Shown piece after piece: positions 4,030 to 57,686 of a stretch of DNA of 64,000 nucleotides. The notes under the pieces were generated by a model. That model ran no database searches. It was given only the letters and a program-made list of their open reading frames with translations, and was not told where the DNA came from. Source of the stretch: Chiloscyllium plagiosum (taxonomy: Eukaryota); the NCBI RefSeq assembly GCF_004010195.1, contig NC_057750.1, forward strand, positions 18,799,860-18,863,859. The letters are read 5' to 3'. The translations under genes and the position numbers were made by a program. Every line of letters begins with the position of its first letter. The stretch's first letter is position 1.

Positions 4030-5030
4030 TAGAGAGGTGCTGGTAAAGCACATCAGGTCAGGCAGCATCTGAGGAGCAGGAAAATTGATGTTTCAGCCAA
4101 AAGCCCTTCATCAGGAATGAGGCAGGGAACCTCCGGGGTGGAGAGATAAATGGGAGGGGGTGGGGGCTGGAGAGATGGTAGCTNNNNNNNNNNNNNNNNN
4201 NNNNNNNNNNNNNNNNNNNNNNNNNNNNNNNNNNNNNNNNNNNNNNNNNNNNNNNNNNNNNNNNNNNNNNNNNNNNNNNNNNNNNNNNNNNNNNNNNNNN
4301 NNNNNNNNNNNNNNNNNNNNNNNNNNNNNNNNNNNNNNNNNNNNNNNNNNNNNNNNNNNNNNNNNNNNNNNNNNNNNNNNNNNNNNNNNNNNNNNNNNNN
4401 NNNNNNNNNNNNNNNNNNNNNNNNNNNNNNNNNNNNNNNNNNNNNNNNNNNNNNNNNNNNNNNNNNNNNNNNNNNNNNNNNNNNNNNNNNNNNNNNNNNN
4501 NNNNNNNNNNNNNNNNNNNNNNNNNNNNNNNNNNNNNNNNNNNNNNNNNNNNNNNNNNNNNNNNNNNNNNNNNNNNNNNNNNNNNNNNNNNNNNNNNNNN
4601 NNNNNNNNNNNNNNNNNNNNNNNNNNNNNNNNNNNNNNNNNNNNNNNNNNNNNNNNNNNNNNNNNNNNNNNNNNNNNNNNNNNNNNNNNNNNNNNNNNNN
4701 NNNNNNNNNNNNNNNNNNNNNNNNNNNNNNNNNNNNNNNNNNNNNNNNNNNNNNNNNNNNNNNNNNNNNNNNNNNNNNNNNNNNNNNNNNNNNNNNNNNN
4801 NNNNNNNNGTGGATGAGATGCATTGAAGGGCATCTTCAATCATGTGGGAAGGGAAATTATGGTCTTTAAAGAAGGACGCCATCTGGTGTGTTCTGTGGTG
4901 GAACTGGTCCTCCTGGGAGCAGATACAGCGGAGGTGAAGGAGTTGGGAATTCGGGATAACATTTTTGCAGGAAGTAGAATGGGTAGAGGTGTAATCCAGG
5001 TAACTGTGGGAGTTGGTTGGTTTGTAAAAA
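4030..5030 (-). mobile_element. Penelope-like element fragment spanning an N-gap, with terminal repeat
   Basis: MASFFKDHNFPSHMIEDALQCISS is a PLE RT C-terminal-like peptide. The terminal repeat carries CTGATGA-AGGGCTTTTGGCT-GAAAC at 4117-4084. Confidence 0.65.
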
Positions 5031-5169
5031 AATGCCTTGCAAGGCTTTGTGGGAAGAGATTAGGAATAATAAGCGAGAAACTCAATCTATTAGGAGTGTC
5101 CTTTCTTCCAAACCCCCAATTAGTTAGCAGACAATTGAGTAGTTTCTGGCCAATTCACTGATTTGCATT

Positions 5170-7230
5170 TAAATAGTAACATGGCAATTATGTCATGATT
5201 ACCCCAGTATCACTTGGGATAATCGTAGTATAAAGAACGTAGAGAGGGCAGACTTCTTGCAATGTATCCAGGAGAGTCTTTCAAATCAACATGAAGGTGG
5301 TTCTCCAAGGGACAGTGCAATGCTGGCCCTAATTCTTGGAGCAAAGCTGAATTGGTGTTTGAAGTGTCAGTTCGGGAGCATTTTAGTGACAGCAACCACA
5401 GCACCGTACATATTAAGTTTGTTATGAAAAAAGATTTTTTTAAAAACTGTAAAAGAAATATTTTGGTTTGTGGAATTGGATTGGGGAATATTTTAGTAAA
5501 ATAAGGCAGGATCTGGTCAAAATAGACTGTGAACAGCTACTTGAGGGAGAATGTACAGTGATAGACAAGCAAAAAAGATGCAGGGGAAAGTATAGGCCCA
5601 ACATGTTGCTTTTAGGGTGAAAGGTGGGAGCAAAATGCCCAGAGAACCCGATGTAACTGAAAGCACGTCTATGAAAAAAAATGCCGATGTAACTGGTCGA
5701 AATACAACAATTTCGTGGCATTCTGGAACTTCCCAGTTCTGAGGAAGAGTCATTGGATCCAAAAAGTTAATTAATTTATCTTCACTGATGCTAACAGTCC
5801 TGCTGGTCCTTTCCAGCAATTTCTGTTTTTGATTCTGTTTGAAATCAATCGAAACCCTACAGGAGAATAGAAAGTGTAGGGGACAGTGCTGAAAGCAATT
5901 AGGAAACCAAAAAGAAACATAAAAAGCACCAACAGACAAGATTAAAGAGAATCCCAAGATATTCTACAAGTCTTTAAAGGAGAAGAGAATAACTAAGGAA
6001 AGCATTGGATTACTTGGGGGCGAGTGTGGAGATCTGTGCATGGACCCAGAGGAGATTTGTAGAGTGTTAAACAAATGCTTTATTCAAGAGCAAGCAGACT
6101 TAGGCACTGAATTCTGGAAGATGGACTATGAGGTTCTTGAACAGATTGGTATGGGAGTTGAGGAGATACTGAAGGTTTCTGAAAGGGGAACAAATCCCTA
6201 GGTCCAGTTGAGTTGTACTTCAGGCAGCTGGGGAAGCCAAGAGAGGAATCACAAGGGCCTTGACCAAATTTTTGTTTTTTTTTTGCTATGGTGGTGAGGT
6301 GCTAGAAATAGGAGGACAATGTTTTCACTTTTCAAAAGTGATTTTTGAGATAGACCAGGACACGAATAGATCAATGAGTCTCATCTTAGTAGTAGTGAAA
6401 CTTTTGGAGCACATTCTGAAGGAGAAAATTAATCTCAATTTATGTTTTCAAGGTTTGATCAGGTGAACAACAGCATGGTGTTCTCACAGGGAAGTCATGC
6501 CGTAACAAATCTGGTTGAATTTTCAAGGAGGTGATCAAGTATTTGTATAATGGGCGGCACGGTGGCACAGTGGTTAGCACTGCTGCCTCACAGCGCCAGA
6601 GACCTGGGTTCAATTCCCATCTCAGGAAACTGACTGTGTGGAGTTTGCACGTTCTCCCCGTGTCTGCGTGGGTTTTCTCCGGGTGCTCCGGTTTCCTCCC
6701 ACAGTCCAAAGATGTGCAGGTCAGGTGATTTGGCCATGCTAAATTGCCCGTAGTGATAGGTAAGGGGTAAATGTAGGGGTCTGGGTGGGTTACGCTTTGG
6801 CGGGTCGGTGTGGACTTGTTGGGCCGAAGGGCCTGTTTCCACACTGTAATGTAATCTAATATAATGTAATGTAATGTAAAGTGTGTAGATGAAGACATGG
6901 CAGGATGCAGTTTGTATAGTTTATACAGGATTTCAGTTAAGCCTTCAACAAGGCCTCATATGGGAGACTAATAAAGAAGATAAAGGCACATGTGATCCAG
7001 AGTAACATGGCAAGTTATATCCAAAATTGGTTTAGTGGCAGGATATAGAAGGTGGTGATAAAAAGGCTGTTTGTATGACTGTAGGCTGGTGTCCAGTGGT
7101 GTACCCTCACTGTTCATGTTATGTATATATAAGTGATGTAGATGAGAATGTGGGGGAATGATAAGTAAGTTTGCGTACGACTCAAAGACTGGCCAGGTGG
7201 TTCGCAGTGAGAAAGAAGGCCTTAGGTTAT
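5170..7230 (+). mobile_element. Degenerate CR1 LINE ORF2
   Basis: Fragments such as DKIKENPKIFYKS, SLILVVVKLLEHILKEKI, GKSC and KFAYDSK. Confidence 0.75.
6552..6880 (+). mobile_element. HE1 SINE (elasmobranch V-SINE), near full length
   Basis: tRNA-derived head GGTGGCACAGTGGTTAGCACTGCTGCCTCACAGCGCCAGAGACCTGGGTTCAATTCCC (A and B boxes), V-domain-like core, and (TGTAA)n tail. Confidence 0.9.
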
Positions 7231-7461
7231 TGTCAGAGTAGCAGCAAGAGAGAAGCAGAGCAAAGTGATGGATGTGGCAGTGGACATTCCAGGTAGAAGC
7301 TTGAGGAGCATAGCCTTGATCAAACTTTGCAGTGGGAGAGGAGTGGAATGGAGGAACCTAGGGGTGAATAGCAGCAATGGAATTACCAAATAAAAGCCTG
7401 AAGTGTAGGGCCAAATCAAGTTCAGCCCGAGCAGCAATGAGTGAACATAGAACATAGAACA

Positions 7462-7600
7462 TTAGGGAATCTGGAGTCAGGCAGGGCTGCCCACTCTCTC
7501 CTGCCTTGCTTGTGTGCTGTACAGAGCCATTTGCTGAGTCCATCAGGAAGGATGCAAGACTGAAAGGGGTGGCTATTCCTGCCATTGGGGGTCTACAGTT
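7462..7600 (+). mobile_element. Tx1-like LINE RT, left piece (continues at 15781/16028)
   Basis: Translates SGVRQGCPLSPALLVCCTEPFAESIRKDARLKGVAIPAIGG. Confidence 0.8.
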
Positions 7601-9983: not shown

Positions 9984-10312
9984 AATCTTCCATATCTTTT
10001 TCCACAGTAAATATTGTTGCAAAGTATTCATTTAGTATCTCCCCCATTTTCTGTGGCTCCACACAAAGGACACCTTGCTGATTTTTGTGGGGCCCTATTC
10101 TCTCCCGAGTTACCCTTTTGTTCTTAACATATTTGTAAAAACTCTTTGGATTCTCTTTAATTCTATTTGCCAAAGCTATCATGTCCCCTTTTTGCCCTCC
10201 TGATTTTCTTCTTAAGTATACTTCAACTTCCTGTATACTCTTTTAAGGATTCATTCGATCTACTTTACATATTCTTCCTTCTTTTTCTCAACCAAACCCT
10301 CAATTTCTTTAG

Positions 10313-10469
10313 GAGAAAGTGAGGACTACAGATGCTGGAGACCAGAGTTGAAAAGTGTGGTGCTGGAAAAGTGCAGCAGGCCAGGCAGCATCCGAGGAAC
10401 ATCTGCAGTCCTCACTTTCTCCTTGCTCCTTGGATGCTGCCTGGCCTATTGCTAAAAGATTCTCCTGCT
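10313..10469. mobile_element. Short rearranged Penelope-terminal-repeat insertion with 15-bp TSD
   Basis: GAGAAAGTGAGGACT...GCAGCATC unit plus inverted pieces. CCTCAATTTCTTTAG occurs at both 10298-10312 and 10470-10484. Confidence 0.75.
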
Positions 10470-15490: not shown

Positions 15491-15808
15491 CCCCATTAAA
15501 TCCAAAAGGGCCACCCCAGGAGTTTGAGCAATGGCTACAGGCAACCCCGACACAGTAGGGGAGTGCCCTCCTTGCTGTACTTTTTTCACCCCTTTTTCTT
15601 AATTCGCCTTCATTCTGATCATAGAGCTGTCACTTACTGTGTTCAGTAAGTTTATATTATCAATTTTTCTCCTCAGGATAGTTAACGAGGGGGGGTGCGT
15701 GGGCAAAGGTCCGCCTTATCAGGGGTATGGCACAGAGCCCAGCACAGCAGACCACTCAGACTGCTGCCATCTTGTATCTTGGGGGTCAACAGGTTAAAAA
15801 TCAACTAG

Positions 15809-16028
15809 GAGAAAGTGAGGACTGCAGATGCTGGAGATCAGAGCTGAAAATGTGTTGCTGGAAACGCGCAGCAGGTTAGGCAGCATCCAAGGAGCAGGAG
15901 AATCGACGTTTCGGGCATGAGCCCTTCTTCAGGAAATCTCTGAAGAAGGGCTCATGCCTGAAACGTCGATTCTCCTGCTCCTTGGATGCTGCCTAACCTG
16001 CTGTGCATTTCCAGCAACACATTTTCAG
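15809..16028. mobile_element. Head-to-head inverted Penelope terminal-repeat hairpin with two hammerhead motifs and a 14-bp flanking duplication
   Basis: Inverted arms are about 90 bp. GGTCAACAGGTTAA occurs at 15784-15797 and 16028-16041. Confidence 0.8.
15903..15934 (-). ncRNA. Minimal type-I hammerhead ribozyme motif (family A)
   Basis: CTGAAGA-A-GGGC-TCAT-GCCC-GAA-ACGT-C. A sister copy lies on the + strand at 15940-15969. Confidence 0.7.
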
Positions 16029-19932: not shown

Positions 19933-19939
19933 ATTAACT

Positions 19940-22900
19940 GACATTATACGACTTGCCTCTCAACAGTCAGAGTGATGTACAGGAGTAGATACACAGGCAA
20001 ATCAGGATTTTGAGAGGAATAGGATTATAGTTATAGCTTCGTGAACATTAACTGGGATTGGCTTATCATGAAAGGATTCAATAGGCTAAACATTTTAAGC
20101 GTATCCAGCAGAGCTTTTTTGTGCTGGTATGGAGATAATCTTACAAGAGATGATGCAGTGCTAGACCTAATCCATGGGAATGAAGCCAATCAAGTGATAG
20201 AGATTTCAGTGGTCAAGCATTTTGGGGATAGTGACCGTCACCCTATAAGTTGCAAAATTATCATGAAAAGGGATGAAGATAGTGAACAAGTTACATTTCT
20301 AAATTGGGGAAGGCAAATTTCAATCTTGGACAGGATCTGGCAAACATTGACTGGGAGCAACTACTTGCAGGTAAGTCTAAATTTGCACAGTGGGTGTTTT
20401 AAAAAAGTATTATAGCGATAATTCAGGGCTAGTGTGTTCCTCTAAAAGTGAAGGGTAAGGGCAGCAAGGACAGCAAACCCTGAATGTCAAGGGATAGTGG
20501 AAGTTTGATAAAGAAAGAAAGGAAACATAAAAGCTGAAAGAGCTTTGTGTGCTGGAAATCAAAAACAAAACCAGAAATTGGTGGAAATGCTCAGCAGGTC
20601 CGGCAGCATCTGTGGAGACAAATTATAGTTTATATTCCATGTCAAGTAACCCTTCTTTTTGAGAAGGAAACATTCATTAAGTACACAGCATTGAAGATGG
20701 AGGAGGCCCTTCAAAATTACAGTGAGTGCAAAACGTGCTGAAAAAGAAATCCAGAGGGCAAAGAAGGGTCGTGTAATTACAGACTTGTTAGTCTGATGAC
20801 AGTGATCAAAAAATTGTTGGAACAAATTCTGAAGCACAGGATTATTCAGCGTTTGGAAAAGTGATTGATCAGGGATTTGTCAACACGAATCTGTTATAGC
20901 ATGATCCCGCCTGATTAGTTTTATTGAGCTTTTTGAAAAGACAATTAAATATATAAATCAAATGCAGTGATATGATTTACGTCGACTTCACCAAGTCCTT
21001 TGACAAGGTCCCACATGGAAGGCTGGTCCAAAAAATAAGAGCGTAGGAGGTCAAACACAAGTTGATAAACTAGACCTGAGATTAGTTTTGTAATTGAAAG
21101 CATATGACCAGTCATGAATCTCATGGATCATTGTTGGGACCCCACTGTTTGCTATGTGCATTAACAACTTGGATATGAATTAGAAGGTATAATTATTAGG
21201 TTTACAGATTTCACAAAAATTACTGGTTTTTGTTGATAGTGAGGAGGATGGTCTCAAGCTACCATCTCATATTGTTGACAGATGGAATTTGAGTTATGTG
21301 GAGAGGCTGAATCAGGTAGGACTTTTTTTCCTCATAGTTTTGGAGGCTGACCTTGCAGAGCTTTATAACATTATGAGGGGCATGGATAGGCTGAATAGCC
21401 AAACTCATTTTCCAAGGGTTGGGTTTCCAAAGCTAAAGGGCATAGGTTTAAGGTGCATGGCACGGTGGCACAGTGGTTAGCACTGTTGCCTCACAGTGCC
21501 AGAGACCTGGGTTCAATTCCTGCATCGGGCAACTGTCTGTGTGGAGTTTGTATATTTTCTCTGCGTCTGCATGGATTTCCTCCCACAGTCCAAAGATGTA
21601 CAGGTTAGGTGAATTGGCCATGCTAAATTGCCTGTTAGGTATAGGGGAATGGATTTGGGTGGGTTGTGCTTCGGAAGGTTGGTGTGGACTTGTTGGGCTG
21701 AAGGGCCTTTTTCCACACTGTAAGGAATCTAATCATTTTAAAAGTACATAAAGGATGACATTTTCAAGCAGAGGGTGGTGGCAGAAGAAATGGTAGAGAT
21801 GGGAACAATTACAATTACAACATTCAAAAGGCATCTGATGGGTACATGGATAAGAAGGGTTTAGAGGTTAGATTGGGATGTCTGGTTGGTGCGGACAGAG
21901 TTGGACTGAAGAGTCTGTTTCCCTACTGTGTTACTCTATAACTCTATAAACGTGAGGCAATGCATGTTGGAACATTTAATAAGGGAAGGATCTACACAAT
22001 AATTCCTAGGGAATTCTCAAGAACAAAGCAACCTTGGTGTACAAAGTCCCTAGATCCCTGAAAGTGTCAGTGCAGATAGGGTAGTAAAGAGGACACACGG
22101 GATGCTTGCTTTCATTGCCCAGTGTAGAACATAGGAGCAAAGAAGTTTTGGTATGACTTTATTAGCATTGGTTAGGCCACAGATAGAATACTGTGAGCAG
22201 TTGTGGTCACCACATGATTCCACAAGGGTGCAGAACAGATTCACCATTGTGTTGCCTAGGTTTGAGAGTCTAGTTACGAGGATAGACTGGCTATGCAAGG
22301 TCTGTTTTTTCTTGGAGCCGAGGAACCAGAGAGCAAATTCTGATTAAGGTATACAAAATTATGGAAAGTATAGACAAAGTAGATTGTGAAAATATTCTCC
22401 CTGTAGCATATGCATCTAAGACCAGATTGCATGCATTTAGGGTGAGGGATAATTGGTTTTGAGGCATTCTGAGGGAACGTTTTTATCATTCAAAGGATGG
22501 TAGAAACATTGAATGCAATGCCTAAGAAAGTAATACAGGCAGGTATATTTGCAACATTTAAGGACCATCTAGATAACACTTAAAATGCTGGGGGATGGAA
22601 GGCTATTTCCCAAGGGTAGGTAAAAGGGGTTAGTATAGCTTGGTGTTTGTTGGTAAGCACAGACATGGTATTCCAAAAAGGCTGTTTCTATGGCACATGA
22701 CTCTATGAGGGTACAGACAGATGACCAGATTGGCAGATGAGTGGCAAATGGAATTTCACCCTGATATGTGTAGGGTGATGTACTTTGGAAGAAGGAACAA
22801 TACAATGGAATATGCAATGAATGGCAGGACACTGGGAAGCTCAGAGGAACTGAGTGCTCTTTGGGTGCTTGTCCTCAGATCCCTGAAGTTAACAGGGCAG

Positions 22901-24490: not shown

Positions 24491-26655
24491 TAATTCTGGA
24501 CGTAGGGCCAGATCTGCCCAGTTGTAGAGCCGAATGTGAATTCAGAGAAAGGGAGCGACCGGATCATAAATGCATTCGAAGGTGATGATAATAAACTTGA
24601 AATTGAGTCATGTCCACGCGGAGGAAACGAAGGTCCACAAATGAGCTGGGTGATGGTTTTGCGCGAGATAAGATATAGGCAGAGACAAATAGAAACCACC
24701 TATTATCATTAAATAAACCCCACCCCGATCACACACGTGGCAAAATTGAAACCAGTTTTCCACAACCTTGATCTTAACAGAAATCGTTTGCCTACATCTA
24801 AAACAAAGTGCCGTTCATTAAGCATTTAGACTTCGTCGATATAGTTGTCGAGAGTGTGGTGCTGGAAAAGCCCAGCCAGTCAGGCAGAAGGACAATCGAC
24901 GTATCGGGCATAAGCCCTATTCCAGCACCAGACTCTCGACTCTGATCTGCAGTCCTCATGTTTCTCTCCGTCAATTTCGTTATTTATTAACATCTCCCTG
25001 AATCTTTCTCGGCCGTTTTTTTTGTGGTAATGATATCTATACAAGTTAAAATTATCGTCGGCAAAACTTTTTATGAGGTTGAAAGAGAAATAGTAAATAT
25101 AGAGATACAATTCGCCGCGTTGCAAGATCCTATGGAATGGGAGTACCTCAATTTAAGAGTTAGCTCATTCCTCTACTTCTCCCCAATCGCATTTTTTCGC
25201 CTTCTGTAAATCCCTCTCACTCCAATTTCCATAAGTTTAGGCCCTTACGTCTGTCTCGAACTTTCTTCTTTGAGTCCCTCTTTCTTGCTCTTCTTTGCAT
25301 TGCTTTTGCCGATTTCTCCTATGCGCCGCCTCAGTTATGCAATATACTTCCACATTAAATCTCAATAATTGCTTCACACGTGTGCAAATGAGAAATCACA
25401 AAATGAATGAATATCGCAATAATCTTTTGTTAAAATGTGTCGTGGATAATTTGTATTTTTTAGTCAACATCTCCCTCTGGTGGTGTAATGAAAGAATGGG
25501 GACGACAACAAAAAGAACTTGCACATTTATCATAACTAGCAAATCCAAAGGCTTCTCAGAATATCTGGACAATTCAGAAACTTTGAACTGGGTTATGTGA
25601 GAACATTTAAGGAAATATTACAAAGGACGTAGTGAGTATACCGAAAATATTCAATTAACACTTTTACATTCTTGAAGATGACGGTGGCTCTTTAGCATTT
25701 ACGTTATAATTCGTATAATATTGAAATACATGCAAATGTTGTTGAAGCTTGAGCTTAATAATTTGAAAGCAGATGAAGCAGTCCTGATAGGTGGCATCCA
25801 CGTGGTCTTGAGGCAAATAAATTATCTTTTTGGGATCCACTTCACTGAATTTGTAGCAGCTTAGTATAAAGTGAAATTGATTGTCACCCTTTTAAAATAA
25901 ATCGCTGAAAAAGCGGAAGTACGTATCCATTGATACCAGTAATTGAAAAAAATATATACGGATAGTGAGTTATTGTTATATAATAAACGCAGAAATTGCT
26001 GGAGAAACTCATCCGGTCTGGAAGCATCTGTGGAGAGAAAGCAGTGATGGTCCTTCAGACTGTTCTGTTTTGGTTTTATGTACCTTATTGAATAGAGATG
26101 GCTCTTTCATCGTCTTCCAACATTGATTCATAAGGAGGCTTCATGTCTAATAAATTTTATATGTCTTTTTTATTTTGAAAAAGGAATCGACATTAGCTTA
26201 ACAGCATCGTTTGAATATGAAACTCGGGAACAGGTTTAGTGCTGCCCCTATCAATAAGATCATGTGCTCTCAATTCCAGCTTACTGCCCCGCAAGGGTAT
26301 TCTGCCTTGTCCTTCGTGCTTCATGCTCAGGGTTAGGAACCGCGGCAAAATGTCGAAATAACTAATATTCCTTGGTAACAGTAAAGGATTTTGAAACTAC
26401 AAGGTTTGCAGTTGGAACAAGTAGTGGACTCACTGGGGAAGAAATACGCTTTCTATTTATTTAAGTGCATGTCAAGAGAACGATGATTAAACCTTTTATA
26501 TTTTTTCTGATCATTTTGTGCAGTAAAGTTGAAAATGGTGGCCCTTGCCAAGAGCGGAAGAGCATATATTTCGAGATATGCCTTAGTAAGAATGTCACTG
26601 CAAGACCAAGACTGTGGATGAGGAAAGGAAAGCAGTCAGTACCTACACAAAATTA

Positions 26656-26830
26656 AAAATCACACAACACCAGGTTATAGTCCAACAGATCTAATTGGAA
26701 GCACACTAGCTTTCGGAGCGCCGCTCCTTCATAACGTGGTTGTCAGGAGCGTCGCTCCGAAAGCTAGTGCTTCCAATTAAACCTGTTGGACTATAACTTG
26801 GTGTTGGTCCAACACCGGCATCTCTAAATA
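26656..26830. mobile_element. Inverted-repeat short element with hammerhead-derived arms (family C)
   Basis: CAACACCAGGTTATAGTCCAACAG...CACTAGCTTTCGGAGCG is mirrored by GGAGCGTCGCTCCGAAAGCTAGTG...CTGTTGGACTATAACTTGGTGTTG. Confidence 0.75.
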
Positions 26831-27898
26831 GTGTCTATACAAACTTTAAAAATCTTTTACCGAGGTTTCACTCAGGATTCCTGCTGCAAGGTCGAAACTA
26901 AAAATATTAGCGGTGATCTAGTAAGCTACACTGAATACCGATTGGAAGAAAATGGCAGGATACATGCGGATCTACGCAAGTTTCAGGACCATATATCAAA
27001 CTCTACGATATCCTAGATGTGCTGAGAGAGTGGGATCCCACTCGATTTTGATGCTTAATTTGGAAAGACGTAGTAGTTTGTATGTAGGATAAACCAGAGC
27101 CGACAGACACACACAACCATCTGGGAAAGGTACAAAAGGAAAAGAGAGGAAGTGAAATCAGAGTATTCGAGGACATAAATGCCCGAAGATCCGTGAAGAA
27201 TGTTTTTAAGTGAAAATAAGAGTGAATAAAGTGTTGGGTGCTTTTGAAAGGGTATTTGAAGTATTAGATCTTCCTCTCTGAGAATACCTTACTCAGATTT
27301 GACGTTCTGACGCAACTAAAACATTTGTAATGAGTACAATGGTGGACTAAGAGACAAATTCCCAATTTGAAATATCTTAGTTATCCAAGAATAGCTCCTT
27401 TATTCACCAAAGTGGAGTTACAAGCCACCTGTTAAGTGCACTGATTTTCAAGCCCCAATCCTGGGTTCGCCACAATAGTTAATAATTCAATCTAAATAAG
27501 CAAATCCTCAATTTAACTGTCTGACGAAACCCAATCAACAGAAGACACTGACCAAGCTCTTGTACGTGACAATAACTATTATTAAGTGTTCATAAAATAA
27601 TTCTAATCAAATGTAAAGAACCATGAGCTATTAACATATGTCTCCAATTAGTTGAAATTCTAACCCTTTTTTGGCACTCCCACACATTCACATTGCAAGA
27701 TACAGACAACAAAATAAATCGTTGGTGTTATGAGATGTGGGAATATAAGTGGGGAATCGTAGTACAATAATAGCAAAGAAGAAATTACTGGAAAAAATCA
27801 GCAGGTCTGACATCATCTGTGGAGGGAAAGCGGAGTCAATGTTTCAGGTCAAATGACCCTTATTTAGAATGGAAATTAGCTGGCAAGAAAGGTTAGCA

Positions 27899-28081
27899 GA
27901 TGATGGAAATATGTTGCTGGAAAAGCGCAGCAGGTCAGGCAGCATCTAGGGAGCAGGAGAATCGACGTTTCGGGCATTAGCCCTTCTCCTGCTCCCTAGA
28001 TGCTGCCTGACCTGCTGCGCTTTTCCAGCAACACATTTCCATCTCTGATCTCTAGCATCTGCAGACCTCACTTTCTCCTCA
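27899..28081. mobile_element. Inverted Penelope terminal-repeat hairpin with 14-bp TSD
   Basis: Inverted arms; AAGAAAGGTTAGCA occurs at 27885-27898 and 28082-28095. Confidence 0.8.
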
Positions 28082-28119: not shown

Positions 28120-28725
28120 GATGAATCGCAGGCTGGGTGACCGCTTTATAGAACACCTATGTTCTGACTGTAAGCGTGACCCTGACCTTCCAGCTGCCTG
28201 ACATTTCAACACATCACCGTGTTTTCTGGTCAACACCTCTGACCTGAGCTCGCTACAGTGCTTCAGCAAAACTCAGCAGAAAGTGGAAAAATAACACATC
28301 ATTGTCCGCTTGGGAACCCTGTAACCTTCTGGATTCAGCATTGAGTTCAATCATTTCAGGGCCTGAGCAAATTGTCGATTGTCTTTAAACCTACCCCTGA
28401 ACACCAGGCCTTGTCATCTTTTGGTACCACAAACGACCTATGGTCAACCATTAACAGCCCTCATTCTTCACCCAGGCTGTTTATCCATTCATTTTCTGCC
28501 CAACAGCGTTTCTGTCTATCTGGGCTTCCTCTGCACCTATTGCTTACTTTTTCTGCTCTCTCCCACTCATTCTCTAATAATATAAATACCAAATCTTTCC
28601 TAGCTGCCATCAGTTCTGAAGAAGCCACTGCACCCGAAATGTTAACATTTCACAGATGATGTCAGCCCTGCTGAGTTTTTCCAGTAATTTCTAACTTTGT
28701 TTCTGATTTCCAGCATTCGCAGTTC
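28120..28725 (+). mobile_element. Penelope-like 3' end (GIY-YIG remnant) plus terminal repeat with hammerhead motif (family B)
   Basis: RRLGDRFIEHL...HFN...HIIVRLGTLxPSGFSIEFNHFR. GTT-CTGAAGA...GAAATGTT-AAC at 28613-28646. Confidence 0.7.
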
Positions 28726-30537
28726 ATTGTTTAACTTTTGGTTGCAGCTCACTAGCACCAGCCTGTAGGTTTTGACTTTTTTTTCTTCCCATGATATCCT
28801 ACTCTCCACAGTATTTCCATCCAGATTCTCAATTCTTTGCGCAAACACAGGGTACATACCCATTAATTGTTAAGTTTCACAGACGCGGATTCTTTGCTGA
28901 AACTGGCCTGTCTTCTCATGCTCTTACTCTCTGTCTCAGCAGTTTCCAATGTTTTGGATGCATGAGCAGTTAGTATGCTGCAGTGTACAATTTAGGTGTG
29001 CAACAGCGTGAGTAGACTAGAGTGCATCTTCCCGCCAAAACTCTCACATCCGAGTCATTTGAGGGTGGAAGATGAAGTGGCGAACATACGTGATGTTTGA
29101 GATTAACAAAAGGCTGGTCCTGCGAAAAGGGAAACATTCCAACCAATGGCGGGGATGCCAAAATGAAAGGATATTATGAAATACCGAAATTTCCTAACAT
29201 TAGGAAAACATGTGGTGAAACTTCGCTTTATTACCTCTAAAACAAGCAGATCCTTCCTAAATTAGAGCAAAACATTGGACATTTAAAGTTTCACCAAATC
29301 CTATGCAATTATATCCATATTCCTATGCTTCCATTTCCTTGCACAATACCTGCTTGCCTGCCTCCTGATCTTCTCTGTTCCATGTATTAGTGCATTCTTC
29401 AAAAATCAGTACTTAAAAGTTTCAAGCATTTTTAAATGGTTTGTTTGACTAATTTTAGTAGCAAACTACACTTACACCCACATTACATATCCACCTTTCA
29501 CCTTGTGTTTAATCACTTGTTCAGACTATCGCCTTTTGCAGTTTATAATCTCACACCTGACATTTCCACCTCGCGTTTTACGGTCCAAAAACCGGTTGCA
29601 TTATTTCCTGGACATTAAGATAATTTTATGCAGGATAATCTGCATTCTTGGTCAAGTAATGGAATGCGGCATATTTCTGAGTTCTTAGGAAGGGTCACTG
29701 GATCCGAAATGTTAATTCTAATTTCTCTTCACATATGTTGCCAGACATGCTGAGCTTTTCCAGCAATTTCTGTTGCTGTGATAATACATTTGTTTATCCG
29801 GATGTAAAACGCCAGAACTGTTTATTGAAATGAATGAATTGCTTAAATTCTGAGTGAACGTCAGCGCGGGTGCACCCTGAAAGGGTGCTTCCGAAAATGG
29901 CATTTCCTAAGTGACGTTGCCAGCTGCCATCAAACCAGATGGTCGAAACTTGATCATGTTTGTGAGTTCTGGTAACAGGTTTAAGCAGGGTTCAGTTTGA
30001 CTGGGCTTGGATTTCACACTAAAGAAACATTATGTAACATGTGGCCCATGATAAAGGATCTCAGGTAAGTGACAGAGAAACTTTCGGCAACATCGAGCCA
30101 TGTCCAGTCCAGAGTGATTCATTTGACAGCACTCTCGCCTCTCAGTTGTAGGATTTTGGGTTAAATTCACATTAGGAGACGACATCAGCAGTGCCCAGTC
30201 TGATATTATCAAATAATATTGAGCATTTGCGGCACGTCGTGAAATACTGTAGGCTGTGGGCGTAGCGTTCTTACAGTGCTGTCAGTGTACCGAGTGATGT
30301 TTTGTTCCTCCTTTAACATGAAGGCGTGTGCCTAACCCTTGTTTGCTATGTTTGGGAGCTTGCTGTGCATTTTTCTGCCTTTTCTCCGAGTTTGCAATCA
30401 TGACGCACATCAAAAGAATCGATTCAATTGATGATAGGGCATTTTTTTGGAATGTCGCGTTTTCTGAAAAGAATCACAGAAATGCCAGAACGTACATTAC
30501 TGAGAATTTCCACGGGTGCTTCTAAATGCTTTCTGGA

Positions 30538-41252: not shown

Positions 41253-43606
41253 CTGTCACATTTGATGTCTGTTAGACTCTCATTTAAGTCAATTTTAGAT
41301 TAAAGCAGAGAAAATATTTAGAGAAACTACAACATCCATCTATAAAACGTCAAAACTGATTGCGGAAAGCATAGAATCTCTTTAGCACTGTGTGAGTTCG
41401 CCAAAGTATAATCATTGTTGTGATTGAGATGCCAGGCGACCAATTTCAGTACAGCAAGCTACCACTAATCACAATAAATAAATAGCCACGATACAGTTCT
41501 TTTTGACATTTTTTCGAGGTAACATGCTGCCTCAACACAATTTCTGTGAGTCCTCTAATACTCTATCAGTTGTGCCACGTGATCATTTACACCCCCTGGA
41601 GAGTGAAGCTGAGTTTAATTGTTGTGTCACACTACTGAGGCACTAGCCCAGGGAACATCAATCAAAATTGTGCTCTCAACAGTCAACAGAAGCAGTCGGC
41701 ACCAGCAGCGTTGAATTTAGCAGCAATACTGCTACCAGCGAGTTGAAAACTACCACTATGATGCAAAACACCACAAAGACATCTGTAAATATTTGGTGCT
41801 TTGACCTACGCAGGATTAGTGATATCATCAATGTAGATAATGAATTCAATCCAATCGTTCTCGATGTGAGGGAAGAGACCTCAAGACCACCTTTGGAGCT
41901 ACTCTCTAGCTGTTAAAATAGCACGCTTATGTAGACTTCCTGCCTTCTCCACATTCCACCTCATTCTTCAGACAGTGCATCACCTTCACGGAGTTCGAGA
42001 ACACGGAATGGACAGCTCCCTTGTTAGAGATTAGAATTAGATGTTGCTATGACAGAGTTGTTCACGATGAATTGTTTGTTGAAGTTGAATGAAATGACCG
42101 AAGTGGTAGTTATGACTAAGGCCTTAAATCAATCATTTGCTCACCCAGAAAATGTTAAAGAAAATGAGAAAAACTCGGAACCAGAACCACTCTGCTCATA
42201 TATAGAGAATGCTGGAACAGAAGCAAAGATTGCTGGAAAAGTTGAACGGGTCTGGCATCTGCGGAGAGAAACTAGAGTTAACATTTCCGGTCCAGTGACT
42301 CTTCCTCAAAACTCATCCAGAATGCTGGCCCAGCTTAATTTAAGATTTTCTCCAAGACTATCCCCTACATATTCACATGTTTAAGTGCGTTGTTATTCTG
42401 GTTTCACCCCTCCTTCGGTACAAGAAGCATTGTAGATTCAGAGATCCATTCACCTCATGCGACCTTAGGAACTGGCCAGCGACAGTATCTCCGAGGCAGG
42501 AAAGCAAGGAACATTTACACCAACATTTACTTCATTTTTGAAGAGCGACCAACGGTGAAACGCGGACTTTAAACGTTCTTTTTGGATCTACTTTCAAATT
42601 AAGATCAAGTGGCGTAACTTCTGCTTCCCGTCTGCCTCTCCCTAGTTCCCTCCTGTACCAAAATTCTCCTTTGAATTATTGTTAGCTAATTAGTTTTCAT
42701 GAAAACAAAATTATCTACGAATTATCCACCTGCTTCGAGAAAAGAAAGCTCTTCATCTGTTTAAAAATGAGGCTTCTTAATCATAGTATTTAAATTGTTC
42801 TAGTCTCTGCAGGAAGAGGAAACATGTTTCTTGTGTCCATCTAATCATTTCCCTGAAGAGCTCCTTTTTTTCAACAAGACCATTTCTCATTCTTCTCAAC
42901 GCTAATTCATGTAGATCCAGCCTGTTCAACCTTAACAAGGTCAAGATAGGATTGAGTCGTCTGAACCTTGTCTGCTTTTAAGGCAATGATATTATTTTTA
43001 GTAAAAGGAGACCAAACTTTACACAATATTCCAGGTGTGGTCTCACCAAAGTTCAGTACAGTTGAAATAAAATTTCTCTACTTGCATGTTGTGACACGAA
43101 GCTAGTCCTTTCTTTTTTCTAACAGCAGTTCCTTGGCTCAAGGAGACTCTGTCCTTGATTTCTTTTTCAACAGGGTAATAAACCGGTCCTGGCTCCAATC
43201 TGTCTGGTTTGGTACAGAGATGAAAACGATTTTGAAAAGTCTTTTGTTTATGTGTAAACAGATGAGACTTCAGGCCAAAGTGGTCATGTTTTAGAAATGA
43301 CCTGTATATGAAAAGGGGATGGTCAGCTCTCGAGCAGAGCTGAGCAGTTTAATTCAGTCCTGTACTGTTTGGAAGTTCAACAGGGAATTGTGTGAAAACG
43401 CTCTCTTTCTTTTCTGCCCTCCAACTTCAACATGCAAGCCTGTGTTCCATTTATATTGGTTTTTAAAAGGGAGTTTGCTTATTGGGACTATTGTATACAT
43501 TCAGAACAGCATAATAAAGTCTAGTTGGATAGACTGAATTCTTTAGGGATTCTTTATTCTGTTCTTTGTGTTTCGTTGCATAATTTTGTGAATAACACTT
43601 TGTCTT

Positions 43607-44580
43607 TGCAAGGTTTGTGAAGGTTTGTAGCTCAGGTTGAGATTTAGGGTGTAGGTTTGCTCACTGAGCTGTAGGTTTGATATCCAGACGTTTCATTACC
43701 TGGTTAGGTAACATCATCAGTGGCGACCTCCAAGTGAAGTGAAGCTGTTGTCTCCTGCTTTCTATTTATATCTTTTTCCTGGACGTGGTTCCTGGGATTT
43801 GTGGTGATGTCATTTCCTGTTCGTTTTCTGAGGGGTTGATAGATGGCATCTAGATCTATGTGTTTGTATATGGCGTTGTGGTTGGAGTGCCAGGCCTCTA
43901 GGAATTCTCTGGCATGCCTTTGCTTAGCCTGTTCCAGGATAGATGTGTTGTCCCAGTCGAAATGGTGGGTTTTTTTCATCCGTGTGTAGGGCTAAGAGGG
44001 AGAGTGTCGTGTCTTTTTGTGGCTAGCTGGTGTTCGTGTATCCTGGTGGCTAACCTTCTTCCTGTTTGTCCTATGTATTGTGTGTGGCAGTCCTTGCATG
44101 GAATTTTGTAGATGATATTGGTTTTGTCCATGGGATGTACTGGGTCTTTTAAGTTTGCTAGTTTTTGTTTGAGAGTGTTGGTGGGTTTGTGTGCTACTAG
44201 GATTCTGAGGGGTCTTAGTAGTCTGGCTGTCATTTCTGAAACTTCTTTGATGTATGGGACAACGCAACTATCCTGGGACAGGCTAAGCAAAGGCATGCCA
44301 GAGAATTCCTAGAGGTAAAAAGGCCTGGCACTCTAACCACAACGCCATAAACAAACACATAGATCTAGATGCCATCTATCAACCCCTCAGAAAACGAACA
44401 GGAAATGACATCACCACAAACCCCAGGAATCCCATCCAGGAGCAAGATATAAATAGAAAGCAAGAGACAACAGCTTCGCTTCACTTGGAGGTCGCCACTG
44501 AAGATGTTACCTGGCCAGGTAATGACACGTCTGGATATCAAACCTACAGCTCAGCAAGCAAACCTACACCCTAAACCTTT
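43607..44580 (-). mobile_element. Penelope-like retroelement 3' fragment: GIY-YIG endonuclease with inverted terminal repeats of about 300 bp
   Basis: ORF 43976-44296 NIIYKIPCKDCHTQYIGQTGRRLATRIHEH and ORF 43704-43979 HHFDWDNTSILEQAKQRHAREFLEAWHS. 44269-44577 is the reverse complement of about 43643-43941. Confidence 0.9.
43684..43723 (-). ncRNA. Minimal type-I hammerhead ribozyme motif (family D), intact core
   Basis: CCA-CTGATGA-T-GTTACCT-AACC-AGGTAAT-GAA-ACGT-C^TGG: stem I CCA/TGG, 7-bp stem II, GUC cleavage triplet. The inverted copy at 44495-44534 has GAAA changed to GACA. Confidence 0.8.
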
Positions 44581-51300: not shown

Positions 51301-51355
51301 TACGAAAAATAGGGTGGTTATGGTAGGGGATTTTAACTTTCCAAACATAGACTGG
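46808..51355. repeat. Tandem duplication of about 2.26 kb, each unit holding a minus-strand CR1, a spacer and a plus-strand CR1 5' part
   Basis: About 46812-49071 resembles 49072-51352, with scattered substitutions and a 16-17 bp indel. Confidence 0.88.
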
Positions 51356-54290: not shown

Positions 54291-54329
54291 TGTTTTTGTC
54301 ACACGGTTCAGCCCCACTTTACCTCTGTG
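54291..54329 (-). other. 23-RSS of V3
   Basis: Heptamer CACAGAG, 23-nt spacer, nonamer ACAAAAACA. Confidence 0.93.
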
Positions 54330-55899: not shown

Positions 55900-56520
55900 T
55901 GACCTCACAACAACAGTGAATGTTTGGCAATATAATTCCAAATTGGGATTGTAGGATCGTCTGTGATTTTCCCATCTAACTGCTTCCCTGATCCTTCTAG
56001 GTTGTGGACACCACAGAATTCCGAAACACTGTTGAAGCCAAGAAGTGTAAATGACCAGTCCCGTTGTTTCTGGTCAAGGTTTCTTTGTAGACGTTCTCTC
56101 AGGCAGCCATTCGTATGGCTTCTCTGCATTGTTGTATTCTCTTTCGAGATAGTTCTTCATTAGTTCACATGGGACATTAAATTGCGTTAATGGTGCTTTC
56201 ACCCGCATGAGACTGGATCGGCCTGCATGCCTATCCTGATCCCTGACTCTCCCATACTTTGAAGATTTGAGGTGATGCTGAACTCCTCAATATTTGCTAT
56301 CTTGAAGGTTTCCCCTTTTCTTTGAAAATTGGCACCAAAATGCTTTGCATTCATACCCTTGGGATTTTGTTTCTTCTCATAATATAAATGAACAGCTTCT
56401 CCAGACCTGGATTGCATGATTGTTCATTGTAGCAGGTCATATTGACACAGATTATTTCCATGTCTACTCCAGTTTCGTATGTTCTTCTAACAAGTGTCTC
56501 CTCATTTCCATCTTAAATGA
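55900..56520 (-). mobile_element. Old RTE-clade LINE RT fragment
   Basis: Manual translation LEKLFIYIMRRNKIPRV*MQSILVPIFKEKG...KVWE...STINAI matches RTE RT N-terminal motifs. Confidence 0.6.
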
Positions 56521-56576
56521 AGTTGTTGTCTCGATTCAAGATTCCCCTGAGAGAGAGCAGTTTCTCTATATATTAG

Positions 56577-57017
56577 ATGGAAATCTGTTGCTGGAAAAGC
56601 GCAGCAGGTTAGGCAGCATCTGGGGAACAGGAGAATCGGCGTTTCGGGCATTAGCCTTTCTTCAGGAATGGCTGAAGAGCTTCTGTGCAGAGGAGATGAC
56701 CTGGGGGGTGCAGTGAGAGAGGGACTCACTGAAACCTTTGTAGAGGGAGAAAGAGAGCTTCTTCAAGGAAGGCATCCTTGTAAGAGGATTCGCAGTAGGT
56801 TGAAATCTTTGAGGAGAAAGTGAGGTCTGCAGATGTTGGAGATCAGAGATGGAAATGTGTTGCTGGAAAAGCACAGCAGGTTAGGCAGCATCCTGAAGAA
56901 GGGCTAATGCCTGAAACGTCGATTCTCCTGTTCCCTAGATGCTGCCTAACCTGCTGCGCTTTTCCAGCACCACATTTCCATCTCTGATCTCCAGCATCTG
57001 CAGACCTCACTTTCTTC
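56577..57017. mobile_element. Partial tandem of a hammerhead-bearing unit of about 270 bp, plus an inverted copy (Penelope pLTR or retrozyme-like)
   Basis: 56577-56620 recurs at about 56849-56891. Hammerhead motifs at 56667-56636 (-) and 56893-56922 (+); 56893-57017 is inverted relative to the unit. Confidence 0.75.
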
Positions 57018-57651
57018 TGTCTATATTACCCTATCACTTCCCGTCAGAATTACATACATTTCAATAAGACCACGTCTGATTCTTCTAGATTCCAGTGCAG
57101 ATAAACATAAATGTCTTGTTTCACAAATCTTACATCCTTTGAATGATTCCAGTAAATATGCTCTGGACGGCTTCTATTGCACGTGTATTTCCCCCTTATG
57201 AAAGGCAAGACTGTCCAAAGAACTCGAGGTGTAGATTCACCAGTTCTCTGCACGGTTTAGCTTGACATCTCCGCTTTTATATTTAAACAAAGTCCTGATT
57301 TTAGGACTGTTAGCGTGTTTTAAATCTTTCCAGGATCTCAGACTTCCTTCACACTGCTTTTTCCTCTCACCCCTGCATTGTTCCTATCTTGGGAATCAGC
57401 TCCAGGCCTTAGAAAAAAACATATTTGTGCACGTTCCTGCAGTCCTTCCAAAACCCCTTGTCCCTGTAATCCCCTGCAAAGGCTACAACCTCTCTATCAA
57501 TGCATTCTTCTCCAGCTCCAAAATTCTATGATAATTCTTGTCTGTTCACCATTCTAGATTTCCATTGCTCTGCTACAGGCGACTCTAGTTGCAAATATGA
57601 GGCAATAAGCACTTTGGCCTATCGTTGTCATGCTGAAGGAGCGGCGCCTAT

Positions 57652-57686
57652 CACCTGATGAAGGAGCGGCACTCCGAAAGCTAGTG
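57652..57686 (+). ncRNA. Minimal type-I hammerhead ribozyme motif (family C), intact core
   Basis: CAC-CTGATGA-A-GGAG-CGGCA-CTCC-GAA-AGCT-A^GTG, immediately before an N-gap. Confidence 0.75.

What the first reader, a model, noticed from the sequence alone, without database searches (positions are those of the whole stretch)
4084..57686. At least four covarying families of minimal hammerhead ribozymes hidden in the short dispersed shark repeats
Seen in the sequence: repeats unrelated in primary sequence share the type-I hammerhead layout of stem I, CUGANGA, one extra nucleotide, stem II, GAA, a palindromic 4-mer, H^, stem I'. Family D (43723-43684, -) has CCA/UGG, GUUACCU/AGGUAAU and ACGU-C. 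Family C (57652-57686, +; relics at 26703-26770) has CAC/GUG, GGAG/CUCC and AGCU-A. Family B (28613-28646, 29681-29716, 5736-5770, 42312-42277; all partly decayed) has GUU/AAC, GGGUC/GA(C/U)CC and AUGUU, probably CpG-decayed ACGU-U. Family A (15934-15903, 15940-15969, 56893-56922, 56667-56636, 4117-4084) has GGGC/GCC(C/U) and ACGU-C. Stem I, stem II and the palindrome all change between families while the catalytic boxes are kept. Established knowledge: Penelope-like elements carry minimal hammerheads whose palindromic helix III forms in dimers, and an extra nucleotide between A9 and G10.1 occurs in some natural hammerheads. Inference: these abundant shark repeats are self-cleaving, hammerhead-bearing PLE termini or retrozymes. 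About a dozen motifs in 64 kb would imply a very large genome-wide count.
Basis: partly seen in the sequence, partly recalled or inferred. Interest (0 to 1): 0.85.

Follow-up and report, generated by a model that had tools for sequence, protein, structure and literature searches.

The report
Penelope-element minimal hammerhead motifs, mostly relics
The short repeats in this window do carry minimal hammerhead-ribozyme motifs, but these are the already described ribozyme motifs of Penelope-like retrotransposons, here mostly as truncated, decayed copies with no evidence of cutting.

Summary
The motifs are real and not chance. A strict minimal-hammerhead descriptor hits 3 sites in 3 sequence-unrelated repeats, against 0.0033 per dinucleotide shuffle. 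A looser one hits 4 against 0.08.

There are three lineages, not four. A and B are homologous subfamilies. Only 5 of the 12 listed sites have every element unbroken, and all four B copies are broken.

The Penelope-like element (PLE) reading holds.
- Motif D overlaps the end of a GIY-YIG endonuclease ORF. All 10 long relatives scanned carry a reverse transcriptase upstream.
- One A motif lies downstream of a PLE RT-linker fragment, though across an assembly gap.
- The copies show PLE insertion hallmarks: inverted 5'-truncated arm, a 38-43 nt tail at one end, and 14-15 bp target duplications.

The layout matches Cervera & de la Pena 2014 feature for feature. It is therefore a new member of a known kind.

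Self-cleavage is untested. Rfam hammerhead models give nothing, and RNA reads show no pile-up of ends at the predicted sites, on a weak library. No tandem, retrozyme-type arrays occur.

The scan had already noted the same thing on other pieces of this genome: 89 notes, none followed up.

The parts
43684..43723 (-). Family D minimal hammerhead, all elements unbroken. Stem I 3 bp, CUGAUGA, one extra U, 7-bp helix II with G.U at 10.1/11.1, GAA, ACGU, C17. Predicted cut between 43687 and 43686.
44495..44534 (+). Second family D motif on the inverted arm. It reads GAC where GAA is expected, so the core is broken.
43640..44578 (-). 5'-truncated Penelope-like element as a fold-back. Arms are 43640-43955 and 44255-44578 (93-95% complementary) with 299 nt between them.
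43976..44296 (-). ORF piece with the GIY-YIG endonuclease core and a C..C..H.H pattern.
   Evidence: Pfam GIY-YIG E=0.0026, 18.5 bits, below the 22.6 cut-off; 6735 relatives at E<=0.001; 10 of 10 long relatives hold RVT_1 upstream
43704..43979 (-). Following ORF piece in another frame. Its stop codon (43704-43706) lies in loop II of hammerhead D.
   Evidence: no Pfam hit
57652..57686 (+). Family C minimal hammerhead, unbroken. Stem I 3 bp, CUGAUGA, extra A, helix II 4 bp, GAA, AGCU, A17. An assembly gap starts at 57692.
26665..26806 (.). Family C fold-back, arms 26665-26728 and 26745-26806. The motif on the minus arm (26704-26739) has a broken CUGANGA box. The plus arm (26742-26769) starts inside helix II.
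15798..16027 (-). Family A fold-back element between perfect 14-bp target duplications (15784-15797 and 16028-16041). Arms are 15841-15932 and 15940-16031, with a 43-nt tail at one end only. Motifs at 15902-15936 (-) and 15936-15970 (+) both have an unbroken core.
56812..57018 (+). Family A fold-back, arms 56812-56892 and 56938-57018. The motif at 56889-56923 (+) has an unbroken core with G.U at 10.1/11.1.
   Evidence: boundaries 56891 and 57015
56557..56669 (-). Family A copy that continues upstream of the motif. The motif at 56635-56669 has a mismatched first helix II pair and a non-palindromic 4-mer.
27899..28081 (+). Family A fold-back between perfect 14-bp target duplications (27885-27898 and 28082-28095), with a 38-nt tail at one end. 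One arm starts inside helix II (27961-27988, -). The other starts just after the predicted cut site.
10313..10469 (-). Family A-related fold-back without a hammerhead, between perfect 15-bp duplications (10298-10312 and 10470-10484).
4084..4118 (-). Family A motif, decayed: one helix II mismatch and ACAU in place of the palindrome. It lies next to the gap at 4184-4808.
4811..5059 (-). Open 83-codon piece that aligns to the linker between RVT_1 and GIY-YIG in three RT plus GIY-YIG proteins. It is on the same strand as, and upstream of, the motif at 4084-4118, across the gap.
   Evidence: pairwise E 5e-4, 0.002, 0.001; the search for homologous proteins found nothing
3712..3744 (-). Family A relic with both catalytic boxes broken.
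24895..24923 (-). Family A relic that is 5'-truncated and lacks the CUGANGA box.
28613..28646 (+). Family B relic. The box is kept, helix II is lost, and the 4-mer is AUGU.
29681..29716 (+). Family B relic. The box has one change, and helix II has 5 pairs, one of them G.U.
5736..5771 (+). Family B relic with GAA changed to AAA.
42277..42312 (-). Family B relic with C3 changed and helix II mismatched.
20628..20663 (-). Family B relic, heavily decayed.
27835..27865 (-). Family B relic that is 5'-truncated and lacks the CUGANGA box.

Best explanation
The motifs are the minimal type-I hammerhead motifs that endonuclease-bearing Penelope-like elements (PLEs) carry at the junction of pseudo-LTR and ORF.

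Three PLE lineages (A/B, C, D) have scattered copies through this locus. Reverse transcription starts a few tens of nucleotides downstream of the ribozyme. Insertions are therefore 3'-terminal pieces that include the motif. They are usually strongly 5'-truncated, often carry an inverted 5'-truncated copy fused head to head (a fold-back), and often carry a 38-43 nt tail at one end.

In active master elements the motif is thought to pair with a second copy through its self-complementary 4-mer, and to cut after H17, slowly or with help from the element's protein.

The copies in this window are dead passengers. Most have lost core positions, largely at the CpGs that the motif contains.

Shown here: the motif layout, its excess over chance, the PLE coding context, and the insertion anatomy. 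Inferred: the dimer and the cutting.
For: - Excess over chance: 3 sites against 0.0033 and 4 against 0.08.
- Features the wide descriptor left free come out as published: all 4 sites have exactly one extra nucleotide and a 4-nt palindrome. [quoted passage not shown]
- D overlaps the end of a GIY-YIG ORF. Relatives: 6735 at E<=0.001. Of 10 long ones scanned, 10 hold RVT_1 upstream of the matched part (7 above Pfam's cut-off) and 5 show a weak GIY-YIG there.
- In D, A9, the extra U and G10.1 spell AUG, and the predicted cut lies 25 nt after it. In the Anolis element PAc the ORF starts at stem II and the cut is 26 bp after the start codon (PMC11167929, section 3 read).
- An RT-linker piece lies upstream of an A motif.
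- Fold-backs, one-sided tails of 43 and 38 nt, and perfect 14-, 14- and 15-bp target duplications match the PLE anatomy in PMC8557442 (passages read).
- CpG observed/expected is 0.36. The family A read consensus restores C at 11.1 (56912, T to C in about 77-92% of reads or depth).
Against: - No Rfam hammerhead model matches, at the gathering score, at E<=10 on the whole window, or on 72-111 nt pieces.
- Fold energies are barely better than shuffles (z -2.0, -0.4, -0.9, -1.05), and B copies fold worse than shuffles.
- Stem I is only 2-3 bp, against 4-5 in the 2014 consensus.
- D has G.U, not G-C, at 10.1/11.1.
- No read ends pile up at the predicted cut sites in RNA raw reads (table 6). Genomic copy boundaries fall 30 nt upstream of the cut site, not on it. 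So most templates were uncut.
- Family C has no coding context in the window.
- The A-to-ORF link crosses an assembly gap of unknown true length.
- Cofold does not predict the canonical helix III dimer.
Confidence: 0.85

Rival explanations
1. The motif is hammerhead-shaped but does not work as a self-cleaving ribozyme in this lineage. It would be kept in master elements for another reason: the ORF start context, a binding or folding signal for the element's protein, or a marker of the RNA's 5' end. On this reading cutting is negligible in vivo.
For: - In D the start codon and the previous ORF's stop codon both lie inside the motif.
- Genomic copies keep the whole motif. Their commonest 5' boundary (56891) is 30 nt upstream of the cut site, so templates were uncut.
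- There is no pile-up of read ends.
- The literature reports very low in vitro activity (PMC4209133). In PAc, cleavage occurs only with protein, is not needed for insertion, and leaves no RNA-seq ends at the site (PMC11167929, section 3).
Against: - Three lineages with unrelated helices keep the same 11 core positions and the same spacing, which a start-codon context alone does not require.
- C and A have no start codon at the D position.
- C3/G8 mutations and their rescue show real ribozyme chemistry in PAc (PMC11167929).
Confidence: 0.25
2. The elements are non-LTR retrozymes: tandem hammerhead repeats that spread through small circular RNAs.
For: - Type-I motifs with an unstable helix III are also the retrozyme type (PMC7229834 abstract).
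- A 2026 preprint derives animal retrozymes from PLE pseudo-LTRs and reports them in its one cartilaginous fish (10.64898/2026.07.22.740005, abstract and passages).
- A 272-nt direct spacing between two A pieces occurs at 56575 and 56847.
Against: - None of the 8 tandem arrays in the window overlaps a motif.
- The copies are solo or fold-back units with target duplications.
- The joints listed are skips and strand switches between copies. No head-to-tail junction at the cut site is among the 15 shown; 168 further joints are not shown.
Confidence: 0.05
3. Chance resemblance: low-information boxes happen to fall in abundant repeats.
For: - CUGANGA alone is common: 54 sites against 43 +/- 6.5 in shuffles.
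- Without the palindrome demand, 1 of 300 shuffles reaches the observed 3.
- Rfam finds nothing.
Against: - The full descriptor gives 3 against 0.0033, with 0 of 300 shuffles reaching 3.
- The hits fall in three repeats that share no BLAST similarity.
- One of them abuts a PLE endonuclease ORF.
Confidence: 0.01

Closest known systems
Minimal hammerheads (min-HHR) of metazoan Penelope-like elements (Cervera & de la Pena 2014, PMC4209133; main text read)
   Same: - Type I motif with both catalytic boxes.
- One unpaired nucleotide between A9 and 10.1.
- Self-complementary 15.2-16.2.
- Short helix I and no real helix III.
- Several sequence families per genome.
- Most copies single and truncated, and pairs on opposite strands a few hundred bp apart.
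- Location next to the PLE ORF.
   Different: - Helix I is 2-3 bp here, against 4-5.
- Helix II is 4-7 bp, against 7-8 in the schistosome families.
- D has G.U at 10.1/11.1.
- Cartilaginous fishes are not named in the main text.
PAc, a Poseidon-clade PLE of Anolis carolinensis (Frangieh et al. 2024, PMC11167929; section 3 read)
   Same: - The ORF starts at the start of stem II. In D, AUG is A9, the extra U and G10.1.
- The cut site is 25 nt after the start codon here, 26 in PAc.
- Insertion 3' ends lie tens of nucleotides downstream of the ribozyme, with an optional tail of 30-40 nt.
- Both DNA strands can be extended, which fits fold-backs.
   Different: There is no biochemical data here. Families A and C have no start codon at that position. 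Copy ends lie about +75 nt from the AUG in D, while PAc's mapped initiation sites are at +111-118.
General PLE insertion anatomy (Craig et al. 2021, PMC8557442; passages read)
   Same: High 5' truncation, an inverted 5'-truncated copy at the 5' end, a 30-40 bp tail at one end only, and a CCHH pattern in the endonuclease.
   Different: The units here are extremely short (125-230 bp). For family A the 5' boundary is not spread out: it sits 2 nt before C3 in many copies. No partial tandem or pseudo-LTR pair is seen in this window.
Non-LTR retrozymes of animals (Cervera & de la Pena 2020, PMC7229834, abstract only; Li et al. 2026 preprint, abstract and passages)
   Same: Type-I hammerheads with an unstable helix III, non-autonomous, and possibly PLE-derived.
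   Different: Retrozymes are tandem arrays that give circular RNAs. No array is found here.
Extra nucleotide between A9 and G10.1 in a viroid hammerhead (De la Pena & Flores 2001, known to me only as cited in PMC4209133)
   Same: One unpaired nucleotide at the same core position.
   Different: That is a type III viroid ribozyme with full helices. I did not see the paper.

Membership tests
PLE minimal hammerhead (min-HHR) | Catalytic boxes CUGANGA and GAA, plus H at position 17, in type-I order | tested here: met
   5 sites have every element unbroken (no stem I demand). The other copies in the alignment each have at least one broken element.
PLE minimal hammerhead (min-HHR) | [quoted passage not shown] | tested here: met
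   All 4 sites found with 0-2 allowed have exactly 1.
PLE minimal hammerhead (min-HHR) | Conserved G10.1-C11.1 pair | tested here: inconclusive
   G-C in C and in A at 15902-15936. G.U in both D copies and in A copies at a CpG. The read consensus of family A restores C (place 56912).
PLE minimal hammerhead (min-HHR) | Self-complementary 15.2-16.2, with no stable helix III | tested here: met
   ACGU in D and A, AGCU in C. Decayed to AUGU, ACAU or ACGC in relics.
PLE minimal hammerhead (min-HHR) | Lies in or next to the pseudo-LTR of a PLE | tested here: met
   Met for D. Tentative for A, across a gap. Not shown for C.
PLE minimal hammerhead (min-HHR) | Self-cleavage after H17, as a dimer or with protein | not testable with these tools
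   One search shows no pile-up of read ends, but the library is poly(A) single-cell RNA and cannot capture such ends.
Penelope-like element, endonuclease-bearing | Single ORF with RT followed by a C-terminal GIY-YIG endonuclease | tested here: met
   The endonuclease part is present (Pfam E=0.0026, below cut-off). 10 of 10 long relatives have RVT_1 upstream. The window copy itself is 5'-truncated and holds no RT.
Penelope-like element, endonuclease-bearing | Inverted 5'-truncated copy, a one-sided 30-40 bp tail, and target duplications | tested here: met
   D arms of 316-324 nt, A tails of 43 and 38 nt, duplications of 14, 14 and 15 bp.
Penelope-like element, endonuclease-bearing | Partial tandem that forms pseudo-LTRs | tested here: not met
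   No direct repeat pair flanks an ORF in this window. All copies are truncated.
Rfam hammerhead families (types I, II, III, HH9, HH10; family names recalled) | A score at or above the family's gathering threshold | tested here: not met
   No hammerhead match at the gathering score, at E<=10 on the whole window, or on 111 and 72 nt around D and C.
Non-LTR retrozyme | Head-to-tail tandem repeats, each with a hammerhead | tested here: not met
   0 of 8 tandem arrays overlap a motif.

The most novel reading that the evidence does not exclude
Families A and C may not be randomly truncated PLE tails. They may be a hugely amplified, SINE-like, non-autonomous unit whose RNA begins exactly at the 5' edge of the hammerhead.

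For A, the unit would be 125 nt, 56891-57015. Many genomic contigs break at 56891, 2 nt before C3, and many fold-back joints land there. For C, the break is at 57648-57652, the first base of stem I. The cut site, 30 nt further on, is not a preferred boundary.

This would mean the ribozyme fold marks the end of reverse transcription or the template-switch point that creates the fold-back, rather than its cleavage doing so. That would be a structural role for a hammerhead that I did not find described.
Probability: 0.2. Interest if true: 0.55.

Novelty: new member of a known kind. Interest (0 to 1): 0.25.

Why it matters
It places cartilaginous-fish-type repeats (organism coded, not named by my calls) among the genomes that are flooded with PLE minimal hammerheads. 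I could not find that stated in print for this group.

It also explains several oddities of this locus as ordinary PLE insertion products: the fold-back 'miRNA-like' hairpins that Rfam half-matches, the 14-15 bp duplications, and the one-sided tails.

For annotation, these motifs should be masked as PLE-derived and not counted as independent ribozyme genes.

The one open point of wider interest is whether the sharp 5' boundary at the ribozyme's edge reflects a mechanism.

Tried and rejected
- **Rfam.** I searched at the gathering score, at E<=10 on the whole window, and on two short pieces. No hammerhead appeared. Only sub-threshold 'miRNA' hits on the fold-backs turned up, which I read as generic hairpin matches.
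- **MAFFT alignment of 15 motif copies.** It was not structure-consistent: the B and C rows were shifted. I therefore did not run the count of structure pairs, fold_alignment or a covariance model on it. No R-scape-type statistic was obtained. With copies from one window, chosen by a descriptor that demands pairing, such a count would be circular anyway.
- **Single-strand folds and homodimer cofolds.** Helix II forms in D, C and A, but z-scores are weak. The predicted dimers are generic full-length duplexes (D, C) or use a 6-nt self-complementary stretch spanning the cut site (A). None is the canonical helix III dimer, so this was not informative.
- **Protein Atlas.** It was closed for new sequences. 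The search for homologous proteins on the RT-linker piece found nothing. On the endonuclease piece it found only 3 unnamed eukaryotic proteins.
- **Reads.** Run X22 laid no read at all. There was no pile-up of molecule ends. The library type makes this a weak negative.
- **Target duplication for element D.** I looked by eye and found none.
- **Lunse et al. 2017** (dimer cleavage of PLE hammerheads) is not held. I know it only as cited in PMC6765202.
- **Supplements** of PMC4209133 and of the 2026 preprint, which list species and motif families, were closed. They may already include cartilaginous fishes.

Full report
**What is there.** Each reads, 5' to 3': a short stem I strand, CUGANGA, one extra nucleotide, a hairpin (helix II), GAA, a 4-mer that is or once was self-complementary, a non-G base, and the other stem I strand. 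None of the motifs spans an assembly gap. The gap at 4184-4808 lies next to one A motif, and the gap at 57692 cuts off the sequence 5 nt after the C motif. I could not test continuity across them and filled nothing.

**Is it more than chance?** I wrote the layout as a strict descriptor and ran it on both strands of the window and on dinucleotide-preserving shuffles made segment by segment between the gaps.
- With stem I of at least 3 bp, there are 3 sites (43684-43723 minus, 56890-56923 plus, 57652-57686 plus). The mean over 300 shuffles is 0.0033, and no shuffle reaches 3.
- With stem I of at least 2 bp, there are 4 sites against 0.0067.
- With no stem I demand, there are 5 against 0.09.
- Without the palindrome demand the excess nearly vanishes: 3 against 0.21, and 1 of 300 shuffles reaches 3. 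So the palindrome carries much of the signal.
- CUGANGA alone is unremarkable: 54 against 43 +/- 6.5.
- A wider descriptor allowed the U3/A8 core variant, 0-2 extra nucleotides and palindromes of 2-8. It gives 4 sites against 0.08 in 200 shuffles and no new family. All 4 have exactly one extra nucleotide and a 4-nt palindrome, although other values were allowed.

**How many families?** BLAST of each unit against the window shows that C hits only C and D hits only D. A and B hit each other at 68-78% identity over 60-115 nt and share the module downstream of the motif. So there are three independent lineages, and A/B are subfamilies of one of them. Between A and B, helix II differs by one whole base pair (4 bp against 5 bp). 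This is a paired change between relatives, read by eye. Between lineages, helix II, stem I and the inner pair of the palindrome are all different yet paired. The descriptor demands pairing, however, so this is not an independent covariation test.

**State of the copies.** Only 5 sites have every element unbroken: D at 43684-43723, C at 57652-57686, and A at 15903-15934, 15939-15968 and 56890-56923.
- The four B copies each have a changed box, a mismatched helix II, a changed GAA or a non-palindromic 4-mer. Two of them fold worse than their shuffles.
- I found a second D motif at 44495-44534 (plus), which reads GAC where GAA is expected.
- I also found further truncated or decayed A/B relics.
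- Many changes sit at the motif's own CpGs: 11.1-12, the palindrome, and 17-1.1 in A. CpG observed/expected in the window is 0.36.
- The family A read consensus has C at 11.1 where this copy has T (place 56912).

**What carries them.**
- *Motif D* lies at the end of an ORF in two frame pieces (43976-44296 and 43704-43979, minus). The first piece has the GIY-YIG core (Pfam E = 0.0026, 18.5 bits, below the 22.6 cut-off) and a C..C..H.H pattern (by eye).
- A phmmer search of 1.84 billion representatives gave 6735 relatives at E <= 0.001. I scanned the 10 longest of the 150 listed. All 10 hold RVT_1 upstream of the matched part (7 above Pfam's cut-off), and 5 show a weak GIY-YIG at the matched part (1 above cut-off). 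RT followed by a C-terminal GIY-YIG is the Penelope-like element (PLE) ORF.
- The ORF's stop codon lies in loop II of the hammerhead. A9, the extra U and G10.1 spell AUG, and the predicted cut comes 25 nt after it. On the other arm this frame stays open to the end of the copy (by eye).
- Frangieh et al. 2024 (PMC11167929, section 3 read) describe the same arrangement in the Anolis element PAc. The ORF starts at stem II, the cut is 26 bp after the start codon, reverse transcription starts inside the ORF's 5' part, and there is an optional 30-40 nt tail.
- *For family A*, an open 83-codon piece at 4811-5059 (minus) aligns to the stretch between RVT_1 and GIY-YIG of three of those proteins (E 5e-4, 0.002, 0.001 for single comparisons). 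It lies upstream of the A motif at 4084-4118 on the same strand. The gap at 4184-4808 separates them, so the link is tentative.
- *Family C* has no coding context in the window.

**Insertion anatomy.**
- D is a fold-back with arms 43640-43955 and 44255-44578 (93-95% complementary) and 299 nt between them.
- Family A units are short fold-backs between perfect target duplications: 15798-16027 (14 bp) and 27899-28081 (14 bp). A related unit without a motif lies at 10313-10469 (15 bp).
- In the first two, an extension of 43 and 38 nt is present at one end only. A further fold-back at 56812-57018 has it on both arms.
- Family C forms a fold-back at 26665-26806.
- These are the hairpins that Rfam half-matches as miRNA precursors, far below gathering scores.
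- Craig et al. 2021 (PMC8557442, passages read) list exactly these traits for PLEs: strong 5' truncation, an inverted 5'-truncated copy at the 5' end, and a 30-40 bp tail often at one end only.

**Comparison with what is known.** Cervera & de la Pena 2014 (PMC4209133, main text read) defined the minimal hammerhead of metazoan PLEs. [quoted passage not shown] Some pairs lie on opposite strands 100-700 bp apart. They counted thousands of copies in fishes, coelacanth and Xenopus, and activity in vitro was low even for dimers. The present motifs fit feature for feature. The differences are a shorter stem I (2-3 bp) and G.U at 10.1/11.1 in D. The phenomenon is therefore known.
- I did not find cartilaginous fishes named for it. 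The search for 'hammerhead ribozyme' + 'Penelope-like' + 'shark' gave 1 paper, which uses the word only for the ribozyme's shape.
- The search for 'Penelope' + 'Chondrichthyes' + 'ribozyme' gave 3 papers. One is a 2026 preprint that reports non-LTR retrozymes in its single chondrichthyan genome (passages).
- I did not identify the organism. The runs are coded.

**Is it a ribozyme here?** Nothing I could run shows cutting.
- Rfam's hammerhead models give no match at any threshold tried. That is expected for motifs without a helix III (my inference).
- Folding gives helix II in D, C and A, and stem I in D and C, but z-scores are only -2.0, -0.4, -0.9 and -1.05.
- Cofolding did not return the canonical dimer.
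- I laid two raw poly(A) single-cell RNA runs, one set of probable RNA contigs and one set of DNA contigs of the same coded organism on 56500-57691. One RNA run laid nothing. In the other there is no place where many molecules begin or end. That library cannot capture 5'-OH or cyclic-phosphate ends, so this is a weak negative.
- More telling, genomic copies keep the whole motif, so their templates were not cut there. This agrees with PAc, where uncut RNA is the main substrate (PMC11167929).

**Abundance and boundaries.**
- Summed word depth in the DNA contigs is about 9.6 on the unique flank. It is 2.2-4.1 million over the family A unit and 1.3 million over the family C motif. The tool warns that this is not a copy number, but a very large count is plausible.
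- Loose ends with heterogeneous continuation mark family A boundaries at 56891 (159 contigs; 2 nt before C3) and 57015 (286 contigs). Several of the listed joints land on 56891 or 56892.
- For C, the break lies at 57648-57652, the first base of stem I.
- In the window itself, inversion points of A and C fold-backs also fall within or just before the 5' half of the motif.
- B copies extend some 20-25 nt further upstream.
- Other first-reader notes on this genome say the same (s1-885836, s1-883930; unchecked notes).
- I cannot explain a sharp 5' boundary at the ribozyme's 5' edge by cleavage, because the cut site is 30 nt downstream. It is my most novel reading, and it rests on one call.

**Not retrozymes here.** Tandem Repeats Finder lists 8 arrays, and none overlaps a motif. 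The 272-nt spacing at 56575/56847, noted as retrozyme-like by s1-884014, reads to me as a longer A copy lying next to a fold-back. I did not test this further.

**Verdict.** The PLE interpretation is right, the claim of self-cleavage is untested, and the family count should be three. It is a new member of a known kind, of modest interest. The scan has noted the same thing many times on other pieces of this genome: 89 notes with these words, none followed up.

Noticed in passing
window 57686-57691 and onward (family C downstream part; also 26770-26806): In the raw poly(A) RNA reads, the continuation after the family C motif holds an AAUAAA hexamer. It then switches to a run of A about 15 nt later, where the DNA contigs read on with other letters (287 reads, agreement 0.89). 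Pairs are strongly one-sided: 811 against 74 in the last bin. Family C copies seem to act as polyadenylation sites about 30 nt after the predicted cut site, in the sense orientation.
   Followed up: partly
window 56820-57019: RNA read pairs over the family A fold-back are about 2:1 biased. The bias flips between the two arms (first mate on + 153-241 against 67-146 on the left arm; 138-178 against 336-365 on the right arm). That fits mostly element-sense transcripts rather than passive read-through in both directions.
   Followed up: no
window 56670-56811 (minus strand): The 141 nt upstream of the A motif at 56635-56669 are themselves highly repeated (summed depth 0.14-0.25 million against 9.6 on the unique flank). 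They stay open in one frame over 61 codons. They may be the pseudo-LTR or ORF end of the longer family A element. Just upstream of the motif lies a stretch complementary to the CUGAAGA box, which could sequester it.
   Followed up: no
window 30497-30853 (-), 32301-32642 (-), 54319-54606 (-): ORFs with the look of immunoglobulin-superfamily V segments (WYRQ...YFCA pattern). The window appears to lie in an antigen-receptor locus. Another first-reader note (s1-883896) covers 30698-32471.
   Followed up: no
window 8212-9369 (-), 46077-46778 (-), 47079-47732 (-), 49339-50043 (-), 51212-52140 (+): Several non-LTR (LINE-type) reverse-transcriptase and endonuclease ORF fragments, unrelated to the PLE copies. 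A near-duplicate pair lies at 47079-47732 and 49339-50043.
   Followed up: no
window 14110-14953: A 422-bp unit repeated twice at 98% identity, covering two near-identical ORFs (14254-14616 and 14676-15059, minus).
   Followed up: no
window 43650-43679 and 44539-44568: A 10-nt direct repeat with 20-nt spacing, downstream of the D motif on both arms, in the stretch where PLE reverse transcription would start.
   Followed up: no
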